Assembly (NCBI GenBank): GCA_001179505.1 | Contig: CDMY01000399.1 | Coordinates: forward strand, 22,685 to 86,684 | DNA: 64,000 nucleotides | Source of the DNA: Vitrella brassicaformis CCMP3155 | Lineage: Eukaryota; Protista; Chromerida | Direction: 5' to 3' | Shown here: piece after piece, positions 46,272 to 56,185 of the stretch | How the letters are laid out: the number at the start of each line of letters is the position of its first letter | Position numbering within the stretch: position 1 is the stretch's first letter | Notes under the pieces: model-generated | Databases searched by the model: none | What the model saw: the letters and a program-made list of their open reading frames with translations, nothing else | What the model was told of the DNA's origin: nothing | Translations under genes and position numbers: made by a program

Positions 46272-46712
46272 GTAAGCACAGCGGGACCGACCATGTATCA
46301 TGGCAGATCTGTGTCTGGTGTGTCTAGAGTAGTCGTGACATGACTTGACTGTGAATGGATGGAGGTCTGTGGGCGTGTCGTTCTTTGCTGGCTGGCTGTA
46401 CGTGTTTGGCGTGTGGTGCATGTGCTTTCGTGTTTGCTCTCATAGTGTGGGCGGGCCGGGGGGCCGCGAGGGGCGTGTAACGGACCTCAGGTGTGTGTGC
46501 GGTGTTTGTTTGGTCATGTGTATCACCCATTGTAACTGATCGATGAGTGTAGCTAGCAGTGAGTGCACTTATGGAATGGACGTCACACACAGTTGTGTCG
46601 ATGTATGTGTGTGTATGTGTGGAGACACGTAAGCTTCAAGTGTGTCGGTCCGAAACGTCAACTCAATCGCCCACTCACCGCTAAGCCACCCACCCCCACC
46701 CAGCTAGCTATT

Positions 46713-48771
46713 CTACTGCAGCACGCCAGCCACCTCGCCTGAGGGAAAACAATATGGACGTGAAAACCCGTCATAAAGGCAGACATGCAGCCTCTCATAA
46801 ATGTGTGCGTCTGTCTACCCCTCCGCCCTCTCCCCCCCACTATCACCCTCCAGCTGGCCGACCCCCTTCCCCTCTCCGCCGCCATCGCTGTCTCCATCGC
46901 TACCGATGTCATCATCCTCCCCCACATTCGTCTCCACCTCGTCGGCCTGCACCACCTGGATCACACCCGCCTGCATCAAGGCCTCCAATCGCTGTGCGTC
47001 GACGCGAGTAGGGAAGTGGCTTATGAGACACACGATCGCCTGAATGAATGAAGGGCACACTGACAGTAGTATCCCCGCTACACGTGGGGCTACCTGTAGT
47101 GCGACTCCCATGTCATTGTGTGTTTGCAGCGCCGCCATTTTGTCCACACCGCCCGCCTGCGTGAAACGTAATAGAGGACAGCCGTGTAAATGGTGGTGTC
47201 CACTATCCAATCATTCTCTCTCTCGCCCTCTGACCTGTTCTATCAGCGTGCAGTAGGGGGTGTCGGGGAGGCCCTCCTGCTTCTGACGACCCGCTCTGCA
47301 CACACAAAAGCAGCACACGTCGGGTATCACACACGCGGCAGCTTGTTGACCTACCTTAGTATCTTGTCCAGCAACCAGAGCATGGCTGTAAGTCGATTGT
47401 CATTCTCGCCGTCGAGCAGGTAACAGAGGGGCTGGATGCCGCCGCACTCGACCACATGCTCAACCTGCATTGCACGATTGAACGAGGAATGCACACACAC
47501 ACAGGCCCGTGAGTGTGGGGCTGTCAGCGGTCAGCGGAGGCACCTGTCGCTGCAAACCTCCTCGGACTATATTTCCGATGATCTTCACTGCAATCTCCTT
47601 CAAGTCGGGATCGGTCTCCTCGCCGGCCGCCAGGTCGACCAGCAGCGGCACCAGGTCAGCATCGATGATCGCCTGGAAGTGGGCAGTGCTACCTGTATCC
47701 AAGCAATCCGCACACAACCACGGCCCCACACGTGACGTCGTCGGAATCAGGGAGTGTGTGTGATGATTCTCTCTTACCTTCACCGATGAATTGCACTATC
47801 AGGCACCCCATGACAGTGAAGTCGTCATCGGCCATCTCCAGCAGTGTCTTAATCGAAGTCACGGCGCCACACTCCACCAACGCGTCACGGTCAGCAACCG
47901 TACCTGAGACGGTGGGCAGGCAGGACAAAGCCGACCCTGCATCTCAGGACATTCTCTCAGGCACTCAGGTGTACTGACCGTCTTTCTCGGCGCACCAGCC
48001 GGCGAAGTCCGCTAAGGCCACTCGTGCGGGCTCCAGCACACACTCATCCTGCTGAGGTGCGGCGATCAGGTTGATCAGCAGCGGCAGGAAGGGGGCAAAC
48101 TCGGCCAGAGGAGCAGGAAGGGGCGCATTCTCGGAGACAATCCACAGATTGCGCAGCAGGTGGGCACTCACGGTCAGCATGGCGGCGTTGCTGCTCTCAC
48201 GCATCACCTTCAGCAGCGGCTCCAGGATGCCCGCCGCCACCACGACATCGCGACGGGCCGCCGATCCGGCCGTGACGTTGCACAGCGTCGCTATGCCCCT
48301 TCCATGCACATCGTCATCGGGTGACGACAGGAGCTGCACGAGGGGCGGGACCGCACCCGCATTGACCACCGCATCGCCATTCTGAATCGCCAGCACGCTG
48401 AGGGCCTGTCCTGCTGCGGCCTGCAAATCTTCGCACTCACTCAGCTGCTCCACCAACAGCGGCACCACACCGATGTCCACAGTCTTCTGCCCGATGCCCT
48501 CTATATGCTCGATGAACAGCAGCCCGGCGAGCTGCCGCACGGCCTCAGTCCGAACCTGCGGATCACTGGCCGACGCCATGAGGTAGCAGATGTCGGTCAC
48601 GACGGCGGTGATCTCGGCCCCGACGGACTCCAGCCCTCGCTGCTGGACGGCCTCGTCGTATGCCTCCTTGGTTTGGATGGCATTGTAGAGCTTCCTCGCC
48701 TTGGTCAGCACTGCTTGGGGGGGTGGATGGCCAGCTGTGGTGCAGGCGGCATCGGCTGTGCAGTCCTCCAT
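46713..48771 (-). CDS. Importin-alpha-like ARM-repeat protein, copy 2 (intact, no IBB domain)
   Basis: Open through all hand-spliced exons: VNAGAVPPLVQLLSSPDDDV..IATLCNVTAGSAARRDVVVAAGILEPLL; GSTAHFQAIIDADLVPLL..KEIAVKIIGNIVRGG; VEHVVECGGIQPLCYLL; PYCTLIEQAGGVDKMAALQTH. Confidence 0.85.
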
Positions 48772-49297
48772 TGCCTCACACTGCAAAGACCAACATACAC
48801 ACAATGTGCAGACTGGTCCACGGCTGCTCTCTGCCGTCCTTCTGACCTAGTCAGTGCTCGGCGGCCCTTCACTTTGGTCCCGCCCTCCGGCTGCTGTCCG
48901 GTGCAGATGTCACAGCTCACATCTGCAGAATCAAAGACACCACGAAATCAGATTGGATCAGGGCTGCCCGTGGATGCTTTCTGGTCCCCGCTCATGGCTG
49001 CTCACTCACCGACAGAGATCTCCTCCACAGGCCGCGAGATGGACCGCAGCTGGCAAGGCACTCAACACCGAAAGAGAATACAACACGCCTCTGCAGAGGT
49101 CTTGGCGGCTCACGGGAAGGACATCTCCATCGCCAGCTTCCGAAAACGCCTTCACTTCCTCCCCTTTCAAGCTCACATCCATCCTAGGCCCTTTTCGTCG
49201 CTTCCAGCGCTTGTGATGCCTTCCATAGGGCAGCTGGAGCCCCATCAGACACAAACTGATGGTTTCAACTCATCGCTGAGGCCCATCGCAGGGCATC

Positions 49298-52200
49298 ATG
49301 GCGGCTGTGACGGTGAAGTGAGCAATACAATGAAAGAGAGGGAATGATGACTGATCAATCAAGAGGTGCTCTGTGTTCGGTTTGTCTGACAAACAGGTCG
49401 GTAGCATGAAATGGCCGCAGCAGAGAGGTATGCCCGACTCGCACACACAACAGCGCACCACAGATGCCCTCAGAGGTGTGCTGTGCTGTCTGTGATGTGT
49501 TGCAGCCGTGTTGGTGGACGGGATGGTCAAGAGAGCGGCGTCGATGGGCTGCCGCGACGCGACCCTCATGCGGGCGGTGCGGCTGCTGGATGCGTGCCGA
49601 GCCGATAAACTCATCGACCCGAACAACGCCAGACAGGCAAAGAGATCTGAATGACAGACAGAGAGTGAGGACTCATGGGACTCGTTTGTATCACTTGGCT
49701 GGCTGCTGACACACAGGTAGCAGATGCGTGTGTGGCCGCCTGCGTCGAGCGGCTGGAGCCACACCTGCTGATGGACGACATGCCGGTTGACCCCCCACAC
49801 ACGCAGGCACAGGTATTGAAACACAGACACAGACACAGACACAGACACGCACACGACGCTCACCTGTGCAGCGCCGACATGTCTGTCTGTCCGTTTGACT
49901 CTGTGTGTGCAGGTGGTGGGTCGTGTGGCGGCTGATAGTTCTGAGTGTGGCGTTGAGTGTGTAGAGAGGCTCTTCACTGCGGCCGGCATGGACACCCACG
50001 GCCGCCTGTTCTCATTCGCCAAATACCTCATGGTCAGTCAGTCCGCCAGCCACACACACACACACACATATACACATACACACACACACACACCTCCAGC
50101 TATCGAATTTCTCCCTGTCTGTCTGCTGTCTGTCTGTGCAGTTCTTGTCGATGTGTGACGTCGATTTGGCCGCGTGCGATGTCCACCTGCTGGCCGCCAC
50201 GGCCGTCTACATCACACGCAAGACCAACCAGAAGCAGATAGCGGGCGGCATTTGGGTGAGCCAAAGCGACACGTGTCATGGCCTATCTATGGCCTGTGTG
50301 GGTTTGTGTGTCCCGTTGTTCATTGTCAGAGTGCGCCCCTTGTGGCTGAGAGTTCGGTCAGCGAGTCGGCTTTGGAGTCGAGCATGACGACGTTGAGGAT
50401 GCAGCGGCTCATGTGGGGCGACACACAGACCACCAAAGGGGTGAGCATGGCAGAAGACCAGTAGAATCGCCAACACAGCACCGTCTTGATGTCGGTGTCT
50501 GTCGTTTGTGTGGTGTGTGCAGATCGTGACCGATGCAGTAGACGAGCTGTTCGCCTCGCCCGACCGCCACGGCGTCGCATCGACCCGCAGCCACCCGCAG
50601 CAAGAGCAGCAGCAGCAGCAGCAGCAGCAGGTGGGTCTGACACAACCGACCGCCATGCACCAGATGTGCCTTCTGTGTGTATCGATCTGCATTGTCAGTA
50701 ATACGTGTGTGTGCGATCTGCAGGGGGGCAGCCAGAAGCACCCCCTCGCCCATCTGTTTGCCGAAGACCGCTGCCGCATCCCCGACATCAGCACCACACT
50801 GCAGCTGAGAGCAGCCGCACGAGACATCAGAGACGCCTTCTCATCAGACCAGCTGCGCAGCCGAGTGGACAACTCACTGAGCCGTGACGGCGATGGCATC
50901 AACACCCCACAGCTGCAGCAGCTGGTGCGGTTCGACCCATCGCTGGGGATGGGTGAGCTCATGGCGGCGGTGTGGATAGCCGAGGAGGGCGGGCGGTGGG
51001 ATGAGACGCGGGAGGTGCTGCAGTGGGCCAGCCAGTGTGGCTGCTGCACACTGCCTGTCAACCTCACGGCCGATGACATCAACACACACGCCAACAAGAC
51101 GGTAAGGCACACACACAGAGGGGCGGGGAGAGAACAGAGAGGCCTCATTCCCTCTCTGTCTGTCTGTGTGTGTGTGTGTGTGTGTCTGTGTGTGATGTGG
51201 TGTAGGCGTATGGATCGGTAGCTCGTGTGTTAGCGCAGCTGGTGGTGGTCGGCCGCCACATCGACCTCGGTGACGGCAGCTGCCTGCAGATCTGCCGCCA
51301 CGCCAATGGTGAGGTGCGGGCCATCAAGGACCAGCCCGGCTTCCGGCTGGCCATCAACCCGCCCCTCGCTGCCCACCATCTGTATCAGCAGCACCGACAG
51401 CAGCATGACCCACCAGTGCGGAGCAGCATCTTCTACCGGAGCGGCACCGGCGGATGGGTGTCGACCGGTTTCCCGACCATCTATGTGTCATTGTCGTCGT
51501 TTGCCAAGCGCATGATCAACCAACACTTCTGCTCGACTCCCCAGACCAATCGCACATCGATATCACTCAACAGGTACCACACCAATGGCACCAGTGGCCA
51601 GAGGGGTGCGTGTGTGCTTGTGTGTGTGTGTGGTTGCTTCAGGCGTGTTGGTGGCGGCCGTCTGGATGGCCTCCTCACCCAGTCGCCCCACACACCGGTG
51701 GCCGGCTGCACCACCACACGCAGCTGGGAAGACGGCATCGGTGAGGTGCGTGTGCTGGTGCTGACCAACAGCAGCCACAACTTCGTCGCGTGGATTGTCA
51801 TTTCGGAATGGGGGGACGGCACCGGTAAGGCCGACAGACAGGCAGCTCTGCTGTTCAAATGTTATCAGCGTTTTCTTCCTGCTTGTCTGTCCGCAGTGGA
51901 TGTGTGTGTCGCGACGACCGAGGCACCTGCGGCTGGTGTGAGTGGTGCCTTCAAGGACCGCTTCCCCGTGACCACTCGACTGGCCCGCGTGGCGTTGGGG
52001 CGAGTGGCGCCATACGTCTTCGACGGACAAGTAGACGATGACAATGACGACGATGATGGTGCGGACAGGGGAGAGAGGGACACACACACATGGTGGCGAT
52101 GGATGTGTGGCATTTCATCTCTGTCTGTCTTTGTGTGTGGTGTAGATTCCGACGGCCATGGCGGCGGTTGGGATGATATGGATGACGACAGCGACGGAGA

Positions 52201-52880
52201 GGACAGCGGAGGTACACATGAGGGGGAGGGATACACAGCACAGTTCACACAGATGCCCTTTGTCAATCCACCCCAGCCGAGGAGGACAACGACGAGGGTG
52301 ACGGCGACAACGACGACGACAGCTACAGTGGTGGCGGTGCTCACAGAGGGAGGGAGGGACGCACACACTCGTGAAGGGATGGCTAATGGACCTTCTCTAT
52401 GTGTGTGGTGCAGACGGCAATGGTGGCAATGAGAGTGACGGGATGGACGACGGCAGCGGAGGTGCACACGAAGAAGAAGACTCACAGCACTTCGCGTCAA
52501 ACACATGTGTGTGCGAGCTGGCTGCAGGGGCGCCATATGTCTTCGACGGACGAGTAGACAATGACAGCTATGATGACGACAGTGACGATGGTACGACAGG
52601 CAGAGGGAGGCGGCAAGGAGAGACGTGGGTGTGTGACGGGCCCTTTGTGTGGTGCAGACGGCCATCGTGGCGGTGGCTGGGACGATATGGACGTCGACAG
52701 CGGAGGTGCACACGAAGGAAGGCACACACAGCACACCACACGCCCTAATGCCCGTCGCCATCACACAGCTATGCGTGTGTGTGTGTGTGTGTGGGTGTGT
52801 TGATCTGTGTGGCAGTTGAGGATGCACCAGCCGAGGAGGACAATCAAAACGGCGGCGGTGACGGCAATGCATCGCTCTGA
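49298..52880 (+). CDS. Cyclin-fold + lineage-specific domain fusion protein, copy 2 (intact), with acidic tail
   Basis: Same exon series as copy 1 with no stops in my splicing: WPQQRAVLVDGMVKRA..RAVRLLDAC; AACVERLE; FAKYLM|FLSMCDVDL..LLAATAVYITRK..W|SAPLVAESSVSESALESSM; then CGCCTLPVNLTADDIN..VVGRHIDLGDG..NRTSISLNR..FPVTTRLARVALG. The 3' acidic micro-exons are less certain. Confidence 0.8.
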
Positions 52881-54532: not shown

Positions 54533-55000
54533 ATGGGTGCGGTCAACAGCAAGAGCACCGACGAGGCGTCGCCCGCCATCAACGGCCAGGTGCTCGACGT
54601 CGTCTATCGGGACGACAGCGATGAGCTGCACAACGTCAAGGACCTCGGCCACATCAGGAGGTCGGCCCTGTTCTTCAGCAAGGTCGACTTCCCCGCCCAG
54701 ATCCTCCGCAGCCGACTCAACCGCTCACTCCATCGCATTCGCCTCACTGACGGCACCCGGCTGGACGCGGTGCTGACGTTCGACGCCCAGACGGTGTCTG
54801 AACCTCGTGAGCTGCTGGCGGCCGTGTGGCTGGTGGAAGAGCAGAAGTGGGACGAGGTGGCTGAGGTGCTGCAGTGGGCCAGTGAGTGCGGCTTCTGTCA
54901 GCTGCCCCTCAACCTCACCGCAGATGACATCAACAGACACGTCAACAAGACGGTAAGGGGCACACACACGGGCGGTGAGAGATAACAGAGAGGCCTCATC

Positions 55001-55035
<35 letters not shown>

Positions 55036-56185
55036 TCTGTCTGTGTGTGATGTGGTGTAGGCGTATGGATCGTTAGCTCGTGTGTTGGCGCAGCTCATGG
55101 TGGTCGGCCGCCACATCGACTTCGGTGACGGCAGCCGCTTGCAGATCTGCCGCCATCCCAATGGTGAGGTGCGGGCCATCAAGGACCAGCCCGACTTCGA
55201 GCTGGACGTCGACCCGCCCCTCGCTGCCCACCACCATCTGTATCAGCAGCACCGACAGCAGCATGACCCACCAGTGCGGAGCTGCATCAACTACCGGAGC
55301 AACAGCGGCGGATGGGTGTCGTTCGGTTTCCCGACCATTGATGCGTCGGTGTCGTCGTTCGCCAAGCACAAGATCCTCCGCAACTTCTTCGGGACTCACC
55401 AGGCCAATCGCACATCGATACATCTCAACAGGTAACACACCAATGACACCAGTGGCGAGAGGGGTGCGTGTTTGATTGTGTGTCTGTGTCTGTGTGTTTG
55501 CTTCAGGTTTGTTGGCGGCGGCCGTCTGGATGACCTGCTCACCCAGTCGCCCCACACACCAGTCGCCGGATGCTCCGCCACACTCACCTGCTGGGACGGC
55601 TGGCATGGTCGTCTGCGGTATCTGGTGCTCACCGACAGCAGCTACGGCTTCGTCGCGTGGATTACCATTCAGGATATTGGATACGCGACCGGTCAGGCCG
55701 ACAGACAGGCAGCTTTGGTCATTAAATCTCGTCTGTCTGCCTGCAGTGATGGTTAGTGTCCTGACGACCGAGGCACCTGTGAGTGAGAGTGGCGCCTTCA
55801 AGGACCGCCTCCCTGTGACCACTCAGCTGGCCCGTGTGGCGCTGGGGTCAGGTGTGGCGCCATTCGTGCTCGACGGACGAGTAGTGCCACAGCAGCAGCA
55901 ACAGCAGCAGGATGACAGCGACGATGACGACGGTACGGCCAGGGAAGAGACGGAAGCATGTGAGTGAAACCGTGTGTGGTGGATGGGCCTTCTGTGTGTG
56001 TGGTGTAGACGCCAGTGATGGTGACGATATGGCTGACGGCAGCGGAGGTACCAACAAAGGAAGAGAGGCACACACATCTGGTGGCAATCCGCAACACACG
56101 AGTGTGCGTGTGTGTTTATTTGACAGGCGAGGACGCCGCAGCTGAGGAGGAGAACGGCGCTGACGACACTGCATCGCTCGGATGA
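54533..56185 (+). CDS. Lineage-specific family protein (cyclin-less copy 3) with predicted N-myristoylation start
   Basis: MGAVNSKS..; CGFCQLPLNLTADDINRHVNKT|AYGSLARVLAQLMVVGRHIDFGDGSRLQI..NRTSIHLNR|..LPVTTQLARVALG; acidic tail ending NGADDTASLG*. Confidence 0.85.

What the first reader, a model, noticed from the sequence alone, without database searches (positions are those of the whole stretch)
49298..52000. Cyclin box fused to a lineage-specific domain
Spread over seven short exons and invisible in the ORF track, the N-terminal ~200 aa align by eye with both cyclin folds. QRAVLVDGMVKRA matches MRAILVDWLVEV; RAVRLLD matches LAVNYLD; Q..V.C.AAC.KRLE (copy 1) matches QLVGV..L.IASKYEE; AKYLM.LS..D matches the Cyclin_C start; LLAATAVYITRK matches LIAAAAVYLARK; W...L..ES..SE..L matches W...L..Y+GY+E..L. 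The cyclin is joined in frame to the C..C.LP.NLTADD / VVGRH.DFGDG family domain. I know of no such fusion. W-to-G in the VDW motif and K-to-E in copy 2 suggest altered CDK or substrate binding.
Basis: partly seen in the sequence, partly recalled or inferred. Interest (0 to 1): 0.8.

Follow-up and report, generated by a model that had tools for sequence, protein, structure and literature searches.

The report
Divergent cyclin fused to F-box-like protein
This gene of the alga Vitrella brassicaformis joins a very divergent cyclin to a member of a large Vitrella-only protein family that probably starts with a worn F-box, so it looks like an independent counterpart of animal cyclin F, though no binding or full-length transcript has been shown.

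Summary
At 49298-52880 (+) lies an 18-exon gene of Vitrella brassicaformis. The public model (P0001, 644 aa) starts inside exon 3 and omits three intact upstream exons.

- **Cyclin part.** Exons 1-7 encode a two-fold cyclin. Pfam Cyclin_C scores 28 bits on P0001, above the 22-bit cut-off. Cyclin_N is sub-threshold (18.5 bits) on the in-window paralog P0031. In the ESM Atlas, 19 of the 20 nearest clusters carry Cyclin_N and Cyclin_C and one is cyclin-I, and its own model fits cyclin A/B at TM 0.78-0.79 over 217 residues.
- **Fusion.** It does not depend on splicing. The 93-nt intron before exon 8 has no in-frame stop, and exon 8 lacks the ATG that family-only paralogs have. Twelve fused paralog models form one clade. 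No RNA contig bridges the junction.
- **The "lineage-specific domain".** It is Vitrella-restricted, with 155 hits among 1.84 billion proteins. It folds confidently (pLDDT 80.5) but matches no known fold. It probably begins with a degenerate F-box; every line of evidence for this is sub-threshold.

Closest known: cyclin F, with the domain order reversed and a new C-terminal domain. I rate it a new variant of a known kind. UniProt already labels it automatically, and this scan has noted the family and the cyclin fusion on other DNA of this genome.

The parts
49298..49312 (+). Exon 1 (MAAVT), proposed start codon; not in the public model P0001
   Evidence: Sequence read. Same start as the annotated paralogs P0031, P0010 and P0046. 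GT donor at 49313.
49397..49427 (+). Exon 1b (VGSMKWPQQR + 1 base); start of cyclin helix 1
   Evidence: Homologous exon is used in the annotated copy 1 (P0031 aa 8-16).
49506..49636 (+). Exon 2: cyclin fold 1, helices 1-2 (AVLVDGMVKRA..., RAVRLLD)
   Evidence: 84% identical to copy 1. Cyclin_N hit on paralog P0031 residues 10-74, E=0.0017. This exon alone gives no Pfam hit.
49637..49716 (+). GC-AG intron between exons 2 and 3
   Evidence: No GT donor is possible before an in-frame TGA. The same CAG|GCAAAGAGATCTGAATGACA donor occurs in 5 of 7 paralog loci and is used in the annotated P0031.
49717..49812 (+). Exon 3: cyclin fold 1, helix 3 (VADACVAACVERLE); the public model P0001 starts at the internal Met at 49771
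49913..50630 (+). Exons 4-7 (49913-50032, 50142-50255, 50330-50440, 50523-50630): end of fold 1 and the whole second cyclin fold
   Evidence: Pfam Cyclin_C on P0001 residues 32-149, 28.1 bits against cut-off 22. An RNA-like contig joins 50439/50440 to 50522 with GT..AG ends.
50631..50723 (+). Intron 7, 93 nt, no in-frame stop: the cyclin part and family domain stay in one frame even if unspliced
   Evidence: Frame-0 translation. ORF 50508..51221. Some paralog models retain it (P0046, P0071, P0022).
50724..50889 (+). First part of exon 8: F-box-like helices (HPLAHLF...IPDISTTLQLRAAARDIRDAF)
   Evidence: AlphaFold helices 7-13, 22-31, 33-36 and 41-53. F-box regions of Cdc4, beta-TrCP1 and FBXW8 align here at Z 3.2-3.4. 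Pfam F-box-like is the commonest sub-threshold hit, 6 of 71 members. Distant relatives P0198 and P0199 hit F-box-like and are named F-box by UniRef.
50890..51101 (+). Rest of exon 8: helical linker with the conserved W.E...A.QC..C.LP.NLTADD block
51206..52058 (+). Exons 9-11 (51206-51573, 51643-51824, 51897-52058): alpha/beta core of the family domain (VVGRH.D.GDG ... APYVFDG)
   Evidence: AlphaFold pLDDT mostly 80-95 here. Only weak SRPBCC/Bet v 1-like matches; best VIA Z 5.5.
52143..52880 (+). Six short exons of an acidic, Asp-rich tail made of a duplicated three-exon unit; stop codon at 52878-52880
   Evidence: Mapping of P0001 residues 529-644. pLDDT below 50.
11975..15281 (-). Paralog copy 1 (P0031, 678 aa): same cyclin + family architecture, used here as proxy for the N-terminus
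   Evidence: A 5.8-kb inverted segmental duplication, 46310-52080 against 18266-12498, 83% identical.
54533..56182 (+). Paralog copy 3 (P0007, 419 aa): family domain without cyclin, in tandem downstream

Best explanation
This is a real multi-exon gene of Vitrella brassicaformis. Its product, about 720 aa once the omitted 5' exons are added, has four parts.

1. A very divergent A/B-type cyclin with both five-helix folds. It has no N-terminal regulatory region, and the usual hydrophobic-patch Trp and CDK-contact Lys are not conserved.
2. A degenerate F-box-like three-helix motif and a helical linker.
3. A Vitrella-specific alpha/beta domain with no known fold.
4. An acidic disordered tail.

Parts 2-4 are the core of a family restricted to Vitrella (155 hits). 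The cyclin head was added once, upstream of the core's first coding exon, and was then spread by duplication to about 12-15 loci.

The most likely mechanism is inferred, not shown. The protein would be a substrate-receptor subunit of an SCF-type ubiquitin ligase, docking on Skp1 through the F-box-like motif. As in cyclin F, the cyclin head would act as a protein-docking module for a CDK or for cyclin-binding substrates, not as a classical kinase activator.
For: **Cyclin**
- Pfam Cyclin_C is above the gathering cut-off in 10 of 10 fused members, including this gene.
- Cyclin_N sits directly upstream, in the right order, at E=0.0017-0.19 in 4 of 10 members.
- Of the 20 nearest ESM Atlas clusters by features, 19 carry Cyclin_N and Cyclin_C and one is cyclin-I (Cyclin_N only); scores are 0.92-0.94. 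The Atlas model of P0031 residues 1-229 fits 'Cyclin A' and 'B-like cyclin' at TM 0.79 and 0.78 over 217 and 216 residues.
- My low-confidence AlphaFold model has 5+5 helices. The large majority of its top 50 Foldseek hits are cyclin A and most of the rest are TFIIB-type cyclin folds, though E is 0.24 or worse.

**Fusion**
- Intron 7 has no in-frame stop.
- Exon 8 has no ATG where the family-only paralogs P0004, P0011 and P0035 start.
- There are 12 fused public models. They fall in one 20-member clade of the family-domain tree, SH-aLRT 93.
- Exons 1-3 are intact and match the annotated copy 1 exon for exon.
- The exon 6/7 splice is seen in an RNA-like run.

**F-box-like motif**.

**Restriction to Vitrella**: 155 hits at E<=1e-3 among 1.84 billion proteins. 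Of 10 distant ones checked, 8 are Vitrella records; the other two are unnamed JGI sequences, one of them clustering with a Vitrella protein.

**Constraint**: median Ka/Ks among 7 paralogs is 0.53 for fold 1, 0.44 for fold 2, 0.45 for F-box-like plus linker, and 0.69 for the alpha/beta domain.
Against: - No transcript across the exon 7/8 junction or over exons 1-3 was seen. The one RNA-like run has zero depth on 49082-49845, and contigs break at the CAG repeat that ends exon 7. No MMETSP protein carries the cyclin part.
- The F-box evidence is all sub-threshold. The best Pfam E-value is 0.05 in the core family and 0.0037 in a distant relative, against cut-offs of 24.3 and 20.5 bits. The family profile finds no PDB F-box protein. 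Structural Z scores of 3.2-3.4 are within noise.
- The cyclin profile finds no PDB cyclin by sequence, and my own cyclin model is poor (pLDDT 43.8).
- Ka/Ks of 0.44-0.69 is weak constraint.
- Two other loci are annotated as cyclin-only proteins that end by reading into intron 6 (P0235, P0236).
Confidence: 0.55

Rival explanations
1. The cyclin head is a working CDK partner. The protein would be a cyclin whose C-terminal family domain serves localisation or regulation, with no link to ubiquitin ligases; the F-box likeness would be chance.
For: A complete double cyclin fold of A/B type. The Glu read by eye as the second CDK-contact residue (C.EKLF) is mostly kept. The F-box evidence is sub-threshold throughout.
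Against: The Trp of the MRAIL patch is absent in all paralogs. The Lys equivalent alternates between K and E among close copies. There is no N-terminal helix or destruction box. Most family members (about 90 of 104) have no cyclin at all, so the core works without it. Distant family members carry a clearer LPxE...L..LR..TCK F-box pattern.
Confidence: 0.15
2. The fused copies are decaying by-products of a rapidly duplicating and recombining family. The cyclin head would be a captured gene fragment with little or no function.
For: Ka/Ks is 0.44-0.69. The public models are heterogeneous, with lost exons, retained introns and split genes. There is no full-length transcript evidence. Cyclin-less members are nested in the same clade with no cyclin exons within 6 kb upstream.
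Against: All exons of this copy and of copy 1 are intact, with conserved splice sites. Ka/Ks is below 1 in every region across 21 pairs. The second cyclin fold has about 55 invariant columns among 12 paralogs. The exon 6/7 splice is seen in RNA-like data.
Confidence: 0.15
3. The cyclin exons and the family-domain exons are two adjacent genes that gene prediction and reading by eye have merged.
For: No contig bridges exon 7 to exon 8. At two other loci the cyclin part and the family part are annotated as separate genes (P0236 with P0021/P0050).
Against: Only 93 nt, without an in-frame stop, separate exon 7 from exon 8. Exon 8 lacks a start codon at the family's usual start. P0021 and P0050 themselves begin with the last 33 residues of the cyclin part. 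The arrangement is kept in 12 or more loci.
Confidence: 0.1

Closest known systems
Cyclin F (CCNF / FBXO1) of animals
   Same: One polypeptide carries an F-box and a cyclin box. Cyclin F does not activate CDKs; it is the substrate adaptor of an SCF ligase and uses its cyclin domain to bind substrates (PMC12232547, PMC9699750). Here too the cyclin lacks hallmark CDK and patch residues.
   Different: The order is reversed: cyclin F has its F-box at residues 30-76, cyclin box at 281-587 and PEST region at 582-776 (PMC12232547), whereas here the cyclin is N-terminal to the F-box-like motif. There is an extra alpha/beta domain of unknown fold and an acidic tail. The F-box is below every curated threshold. 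It occurs in a chromerid alga as about 12-15 recent paralogs, so it is an independent origin and not an ortholog.
A/B-type mitotic cyclins (Pfam Cyclin_N PF00134 + Cyclin_C PF02984)
   Same: Two five-helix folds in the same order. The best structural and feature matches are cyclin A and B-like cyclins.
   Different: Only about 14 residues precede helix 1, so there is no destruction box or N-terminal helix. Cyclin_N is below cut-off. The patch Trp is lost and the Lys is variable. About 480 further residues follow the cyclin.
Lineage-specific expansions of 'FBXO'-type F-box proteins (plants, nematodes)
   Same: A short N-terminal F-box-like motif, a helical linker and a fast-evolving C-terminal domain. 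There are more than 100 paralogs in one lineage, and the C-terminal domain evolves fastest (Ka/Ks 0.69).
   Different: The C-terminal domain is not WD40, LRR, Kelch, FBA or any Pfam family. The F-box is not detectable at curated thresholds.
SRPBCC / Bet v 1 helix-grip fold
   Same: The alpha/beta core (model residues ~200-355: antiparallel sheet plus a long C-terminal helix) gives its best, weak, Foldseek and Atlas matches to this fold.
   Different: E is 0.014 or worse, and TM by target is 0.24-0.45. It is not recovered by VIA-align, whose best match is an adaptin appendage at Z 5.5, within noise. This is not evidence of membership.

Membership tests
Cyclin (Pfam clan Cyclin-like) | Cyclin_C domain above the Pfam gathering score | tested here: met
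   P0001 (this gene) scores 28.1 bits against 22, E=2.2e-6, residues 32-149 on profile positions 8-115 of 119. 10 of 10 fused paralogs score 27-32 bits.
Cyclin (Pfam clan Cyclin-like) | Cyclin_N domain above the Pfam gathering score | tested here: not met
   The best is paralog P0031 at 18.5 bits against 23 (E=0.0017, residues 10-74 on profile 26-89). It is seen in 4 of 10 members. Exon 2 of this copy alone gives no hit. The joined exons 1-3 of this copy were not searched.
Cyclin (Pfam clan Cyclin-like) | Two five-helix cyclin folds superposable on a known cyclin | tested here: met
   Tested on paralog P0031. The ESM Atlas model of residues 1-229 gives TM by query 0.79 (Cyclin A) and 0.78 (B-like cyclin) over 217 and 216 residues. 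Of 20 feature neighbours, 19 carry Cyclin_N and Cyclin_C and one is cyclin-I. My AlphaFold model has 10 helices but pLDDT 43.8. Its Foldseek hits are mostly cyclin A, only at E 0.24 or worse.
Cyclin (Pfam clan Cyclin-like) | Conserved CDK-contact Lys/Glu pair and MRAIL hydrophobic patch | tested here: inconclusive
   The alignment is by eye only. The patch reads QRAVLVDG, with G/R/Q/E at the Trp site in all paralogs. The Lys site is K or E (E in this copy). The Glu is mostly kept. No tool-based residue alignment to a real cyclin was available.
Cyclin (Pfam clan Cyclin-like) | Binds and activates a CDK | not testable with these tools
   Needs co-IP, a kinase assay or a multimer prediction.
F-box proteins (SCF substrate receptors) | F-box (PF00646) or F-box-like (PF12937) above the gathering score | tested here: not met
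   None of 79 members hits at E<=0.1. On N-terminal segments, F-box-like is the most frequent family but only 6 of 71 hit, best E=0.05. Distant relatives: P0198 scores 17.4 bits (cut-off 24.3) and 15.2 bits (cut-off 20.5); P0199 scores 14.8 bits. This gene's own segment gives no hit.
F-box proteins (SCF substrate receptors) | LPxE...(I/L)...L...DL..L..V(C/S)(K/R).W sequence pattern | tested here: inconclusive
   The pattern is clear in distant members (P0199 LPPEV..IFPFL..LARLRRTCK; P0228 LPLEL...LLSFLLSVCDLVNVRSTSR). It is recognisable in the main family (HPF.YIF....LLS..DILRLRATC.WLR.LF). It is worn in the cyclin clade (HPLAHLF...IPDISTTLQLRAAARDIRDAF).
F-box proteins (SCF substrate receptors) | Three-helix F-box fold followed by a linker and a C-terminal binding domain | tested here: inconclusive
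   The AlphaFold model has helices 7-13, 22-31/33-36 and 41-53, then a linker and an alpha/beta domain. The F-box regions of 1nex_B (Cdc4), 6ttu_T (beta-TrCP1) and 7z8b_F (FBXW8) align to model residues 1-92/138 at Z 3.2-3.4, within the noise range.
F-box proteins (SCF substrate receptors) | Binds Skp1 | not testable with these tools
   Needs a pull-down, two-hybrid or multimer prediction with Vitrella Skp1.
Cyclin F orthologs | F-box N-terminal to the cyclin box, with orthology to metazoan CCNF | tested here: not met
   The order is reversed. No relative of the cyclin part was found outside Vitrella by word search, and the best matches are cyclin A/B-like. The gene works like cyclin F at most by analogy.

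The most novel reading that the evidence does not exclude
Vitrella independently invented a cyclin-F-like ubiquitin-ligase adaptor. A degenerate cyclin serves as one of several interchangeable N-terminal 'heads' mounted on a lineage-specific F-box plus new-fold core; a CBM20 fragment and RRMs are seen on other members. This gives a modular, fast-diversifying substrate-receptor repertoire, part of which is wired to the cell-cycle machinery.
Probability: 0.3. Interest if true: 0.7.

Novelty: new variant of a known kind. Interest (0 to 1): 0.5.

Why it matters
If the F-box reading holds, this would be a second, independent joining of a cyclin to an SCF adaptor, in an alga close to apicomplexan parasites. 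It would offer a natural test of what a cyclin fold does when it is not a kinase activator.

It also gives a handle on a family restricted to Vitrella (155 hits), whose confidently predicted C-terminal domain matches no known fold. In practical terms, the public gene model is truncated: it misses the first cyclin fold.

Tried and rejected
**Searches that gave nothing**
- Exon-by-exon Pfam gave only one weak Cyclin_C hit, on exon 5 (E=0.099).
- Profile-to-PDB sequence searches found no cyclin for the cyclin part. They found nothing for the family domain, its N-terminal 130 residues, or a 59-column F-box-like profile that included distant members.
- AlphaFold of the cyclin part with 12 paralogs gave pLDDT 43.8. 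Its fold search is only indicative.
- The Foldseek, VIA-wide and Atlas searches of the good family-domain model gave no significant fold. The SRPBCC likeness is rejected as membership.
- The ESM Atlas search with the cyclin-less paralog P0007 gave nothing usable.
- The literature search found no paper on this family.

**Read laying**
- Three of the four runs behave as DNA.
- The RNA-like run supports only the exon 6/7 splice. Because of near-identical paralogs, it cannot be assigned to this copy alone.

**Ideas rejected**
- The + strand ORF 48505-49347 is not an upstream coding extension. It is in another frame, has no Pfam hit, and overlaps a spliced minus-strand ARM-repeat gene.
- An alternative GT donor downstream of exon 2 is ruled out, because an in-frame TGA precedes it.

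**Steps not done**
- I did not search or fold a joined full-length model of this copy. I used the public P0001 and the paralog P0031 instead.
Full report
**Where and what.** The window is from Vitrella brassicaformis CCMP3155. All close protein hits are from that genome, and earlier notes of this scan say the same. It has about 60% G+C and short GT-AG introns rich in CA/TG repeats.

**Gene model.** Reading the three + frames of 49200-52700 and locating the exons gives one gene:
- exon 1: 49298-49312 (MAAVT)
- exon 1b: 49397-49427
- exon 2: 49506-49636
- exon 3: 49717-49812
- exon 4: 49913-50032
- exon 5: 50142-50255
- exon 6: 50330-50440
- exon 7: 50523-50630
- exon 8: 50724-51101
- exon 9: 51206-51573
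- exon 10: 51643-51824
- exon 11: 51897-52058
- six short acidic-tail exons, ending at the stop codon 52878-52880

All introns are GT-AG except 49637-49716, which has a GC donor. No GT donor is usable there, because an in-frame TGA follows at once. The same CAG|GCAAAGAGATCTGAATGACA donor is present, letter for letter, in five of seven paralog loci. It is used in the public model of copy 1.

**Public model.** The word search returned the annotated protein of this gene, P0001 (644 aa). It maps exactly to exons 3-18 but starts at an internal Met at 49771. It therefore lacks exons 1, 1b and 2 and the start of exon 3, which is most of the first cyclin fold. Those exons are intact in this copy. They match, exon for exon, the annotated N-terminus of the paralog in the same window, P0031 at 15281-11975 on the minus strand. 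P0031 serves as proxy for the N-terminus; it is 84% identical over exon 2 and 81% over the aligned part of exon 3.

**Is it a cyclin?** The evidence for:
- Pfam Cyclin_C hits P0001 at 28.1 bits (cut-off 22, E=2.2e-6) over nearly the whole profile. It hits all ten fused paralogs tested at 27-32 bits.
- Cyclin_N lies directly upstream in four of ten, best 18.5 bits in P0031 (cut-off 23, E=0.0017).
- The ESM Atlas holds P0031. For residues 1-238, 19 of the 20 nearest clusters by language-model features carry Cyclin_N and Cyclin_C and one is cyclin-I; scores are 0.92-0.94, with 168-174 shared features. The Atlas's own model of residues 1-229 superposes on 'Cyclin A' and 'B-like cyclin' clusters at TM 0.79 and 0.78 (by query) over 217 and 216 residues.

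The weaker evidence:
- My AlphaFold run on 12 paralogs was poor (pLDDT 43.8) but gave 5+5 helices.
- The large majority of that model's top 50 Foldseek hits are cyclin A, and most of the rest are TFIIB or Brf cyclin folds. All are at E 0.24 or worse, so this is only indicative.
- A profile of the cyclin part finds no PDB cyclin by sequence. The cyclin is therefore very divergent.

By eye, the MRAIL box reads QRAVLVDG. The Trp site is G, R, Q or E in every paralog. The Lys of the 'ASKYEE' helix is K in some copies and E in others, including this one. Only about 14 residues precede helix 1, so there is no destruction box.

**Is the fusion real?** Four arguments rest on the DNA alone.
1. The 93-nt intron 7 (50631-50723) has no in-frame stop, so exon 7, intron 7 and exon 8 form one ORF, 50508..51221. 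Some paralog models simply read through it.
2. Family-only paralogs start with Met exactly where exon 8 begins ('MA.QEHP...'). This gene has GGSQKHP there, and its first Met comes about 75 residues later.
3. Twelve public models carry the same cyclin + family layout, and three short models carry the cyclin part alone. Two of these (P0235, P0236) end by reading into intron 6. The third (P0237) continues into the family domain and is a truncated fused model. Two 'family-only' models begin with the last 33 cyclin residues, so these are split annotations.
4. On a tree of the family domain, all 12 fused members fall in one 20-member clade (SH-aLRT 93), and three changes of state suffice. Two cyclin-less members of that clade truly lack cyclin exons within 6 kb upstream. 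Loss, or exchange of modules between copies, has therefore occurred.

RNA evidence is thin. Of the four runs laid, three behave as DNA because their contigs span introns. The RNA-like run shows a GT..AG joint from 50439/50440 to 50522 (exon 6 to 7) and a minus-strand intron in the upstream gene. It has no depth on 49082-49845, and no contig crosses exon 7 to exon 8, where a CAG repeat breaks the contigs. No MMETSP protein carries the cyclin part.

**What is the 'lineage-specific domain'?** It is lineage-specific. A profile of 79 members (A2) scored against 1.84 billion representative proteins finds 155 hits at E<=1e-3. Of ten of the most distant or longest ones, eight are Vitrella records; the other two are unnamed JGI sequences, one of which clusters with a Vitrella protein. 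Pfam finds nothing, and so does a PDB sequence search.

AlphaFold with the 79-row alignment gives a confident model (pLDDT 80.5, pTM 0.77) with three regions:
- an N-terminal helical part (residues 7-53)
- a helical linker carrying the C..C.LP.NLTADD block
- an alpha/beta core (about residues 170-355) ending in a long helix, followed by a disordered acidic tail

No known fold matches it. Foldseek's best E is 0.014, to Bet v 1/SRPBCC proteins, with poor TM. VIA-align over 48,161 chains has a best Z of 5.5, below the noise level stated by the tool. The Atlas gives weak SRPBCC rows with TM below 0.5.

**F-box reading.** Several weak lines agree.
- Among the VIA rows, the F-box regions of Cdc4 (1nex_B 277-360), beta-TrCP1 (6ttu_T 186-280) and FBXW8 (7z8b_F) align to the first 90-138 model residues at Z 3.2-3.4.
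- On the N-terminal 130-residue segments, Pfam F-box-like is the family hit by most members, but only 6 of 71, best E=0.05.
- Two distant Vitrella relatives hit F-box-like or F-box at E=0.0037-0.025. UniRef names both 'F-box domain-containing protein'.
- The family profile aligns its L..D.LRLRAT....R..F block to the corresponding part of the P0199 F-box (residue 50 onward); for P0198 the F-box position fits only by extrapolation.
- Distant members show a plain LPxE...L..L..DL..(L/V)R.T(C/S)(K/R) pattern.
- In the cyclin clade the motif is more worn (HPLAHLF...IPDISTTLQLRAAARDIRDAF).

No curated threshold is met, and the profiles find no PDB F-box protein. I put the F-box reading at about 60%. 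Two earlier follow-ups of this scan, on other pieces of this genome, reached the same reading for what appears to be the same family. That is not independent proof.

**Selection.** Codon comparison of seven fused paralogs (21 pairs, Nei-Gojobori) gives these median Ka/Ks values:

| Region | Median Ka/Ks |
|---|---|
| Cyclin fold 1 | 0.53 |
| Cyclin fold 2 | 0.44 |
| F-box-like + linker | 0.45 |
| Alpha/beta domain | 0.69 |

Constraint is weak to moderate everywhere and weakest in the putative recognition domain. Between the two window copies, the cyclin exons are more alike (Ks 0.12) than the family exons (Ks 0.30). This suggests gene conversion or module exchange.

**Mechanism proposed (inferred).** The protein would be an SCF-type substrate receptor. 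The F-box-like motif docks on Skp1, the alpha/beta domain recognises targets, and the cyclin head adds a second docking surface for a CDK or for cyclin-binding proteins. This is how cyclin F uses its cyclin box without activating CDKs (PMC12232547; PMC9699750, abstract). Cyclin F has the opposite order, with the F-box at residues 30-76 and the cyclin box at 281-587. The Vitrella cyclin is closest to A/B cyclins, so this is analogy and not orthology.

**Novelty.** The fusion is already in public databases under an automatic name. I found no paper on it. It is a new variant of a known kind, a cyclin combined with an F-box-like adaptor.

- Reads were laid on 5,701 letters.
- The joined spliced model of this copy was not searched.

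Noticed in passing
window 47965-48801 (-), and 46310-49200 generally: An armadillo-repeat gene (Pfam Arm, E=2e-12) lies head-to-head upstream of the cyclin fusion. It is part of the 5.8-kb inverted duplication shared with copy 1 (46310-52080 against 18266-12498, 83%). ARM-repeat genes also sit upstream, on the opposite strand, at the P0019 and P0047 loci, so the pair seems to duplicate as a unit.
   Followed up: partly
window 54533-56182 (+): The tandem downstream paralog P0007 has the family core without a cyclin. It starts MGAVNSKS, an N-myristoylation-like MGxxxS motif shared by its subclade.
   Followed up: no
window 49637-49656; L003-L005; window 14941-14922 (-): The first 20 nt of the GC-AG intron (GCAAAGAGATCTGAATGACA) are identical in five paralogs, although the exon just before it varies. 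Read through, it would end the protein after AKRSE.
   Followed up: partly
window 50441-50470: Reading into intron 6 gives ...TTKGVSMAEDQ-stop. Two other loci are annotated exactly so, as about 205-aa cyclin-only proteins (P0235, P0236). Retention of intron 6 could therefore yield a stand-alone cyclin-like product.
   Followed up: partly
P0107, P0116, P0185 (family members): Other members carry different N-terminal heads before the same F-box-like motif: a partial CBM_20 (P0107, 23.2 bits) and RRM domains (P0116). P0185 ends in a ubiquitin domain. It was not checked whether these are real genes or merged models.
   Followed up: partly
window 52034-52877 (+): The acidic tail is a duplicated three-exon unit (APYVFDG.VD.D.. 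/ DGH.GGGWDDMD.DS..ED.. / AEEDN..G.GD..) with one extra exon between the two copies.
   Followed up: no
window 49505-50630 against 15073-13963, and 50724-52058 against 13875-12521: Between the two window copies, Ks is 0.12 in the cyclin exons and 0.30 in the family exons. On the family-domain tree, copy 1 sits with cyclin-less members. This hints at gene conversion or transfer of the cyclin module between paralogs.
   Followed up: partly
window 49771: The public model P0001 (Vitrella CCMP3155 annotation) starts at an internal Met and omits three intact upstream coding exons, so the first cyclin fold is missing from the database entry.
   Followed up: yes
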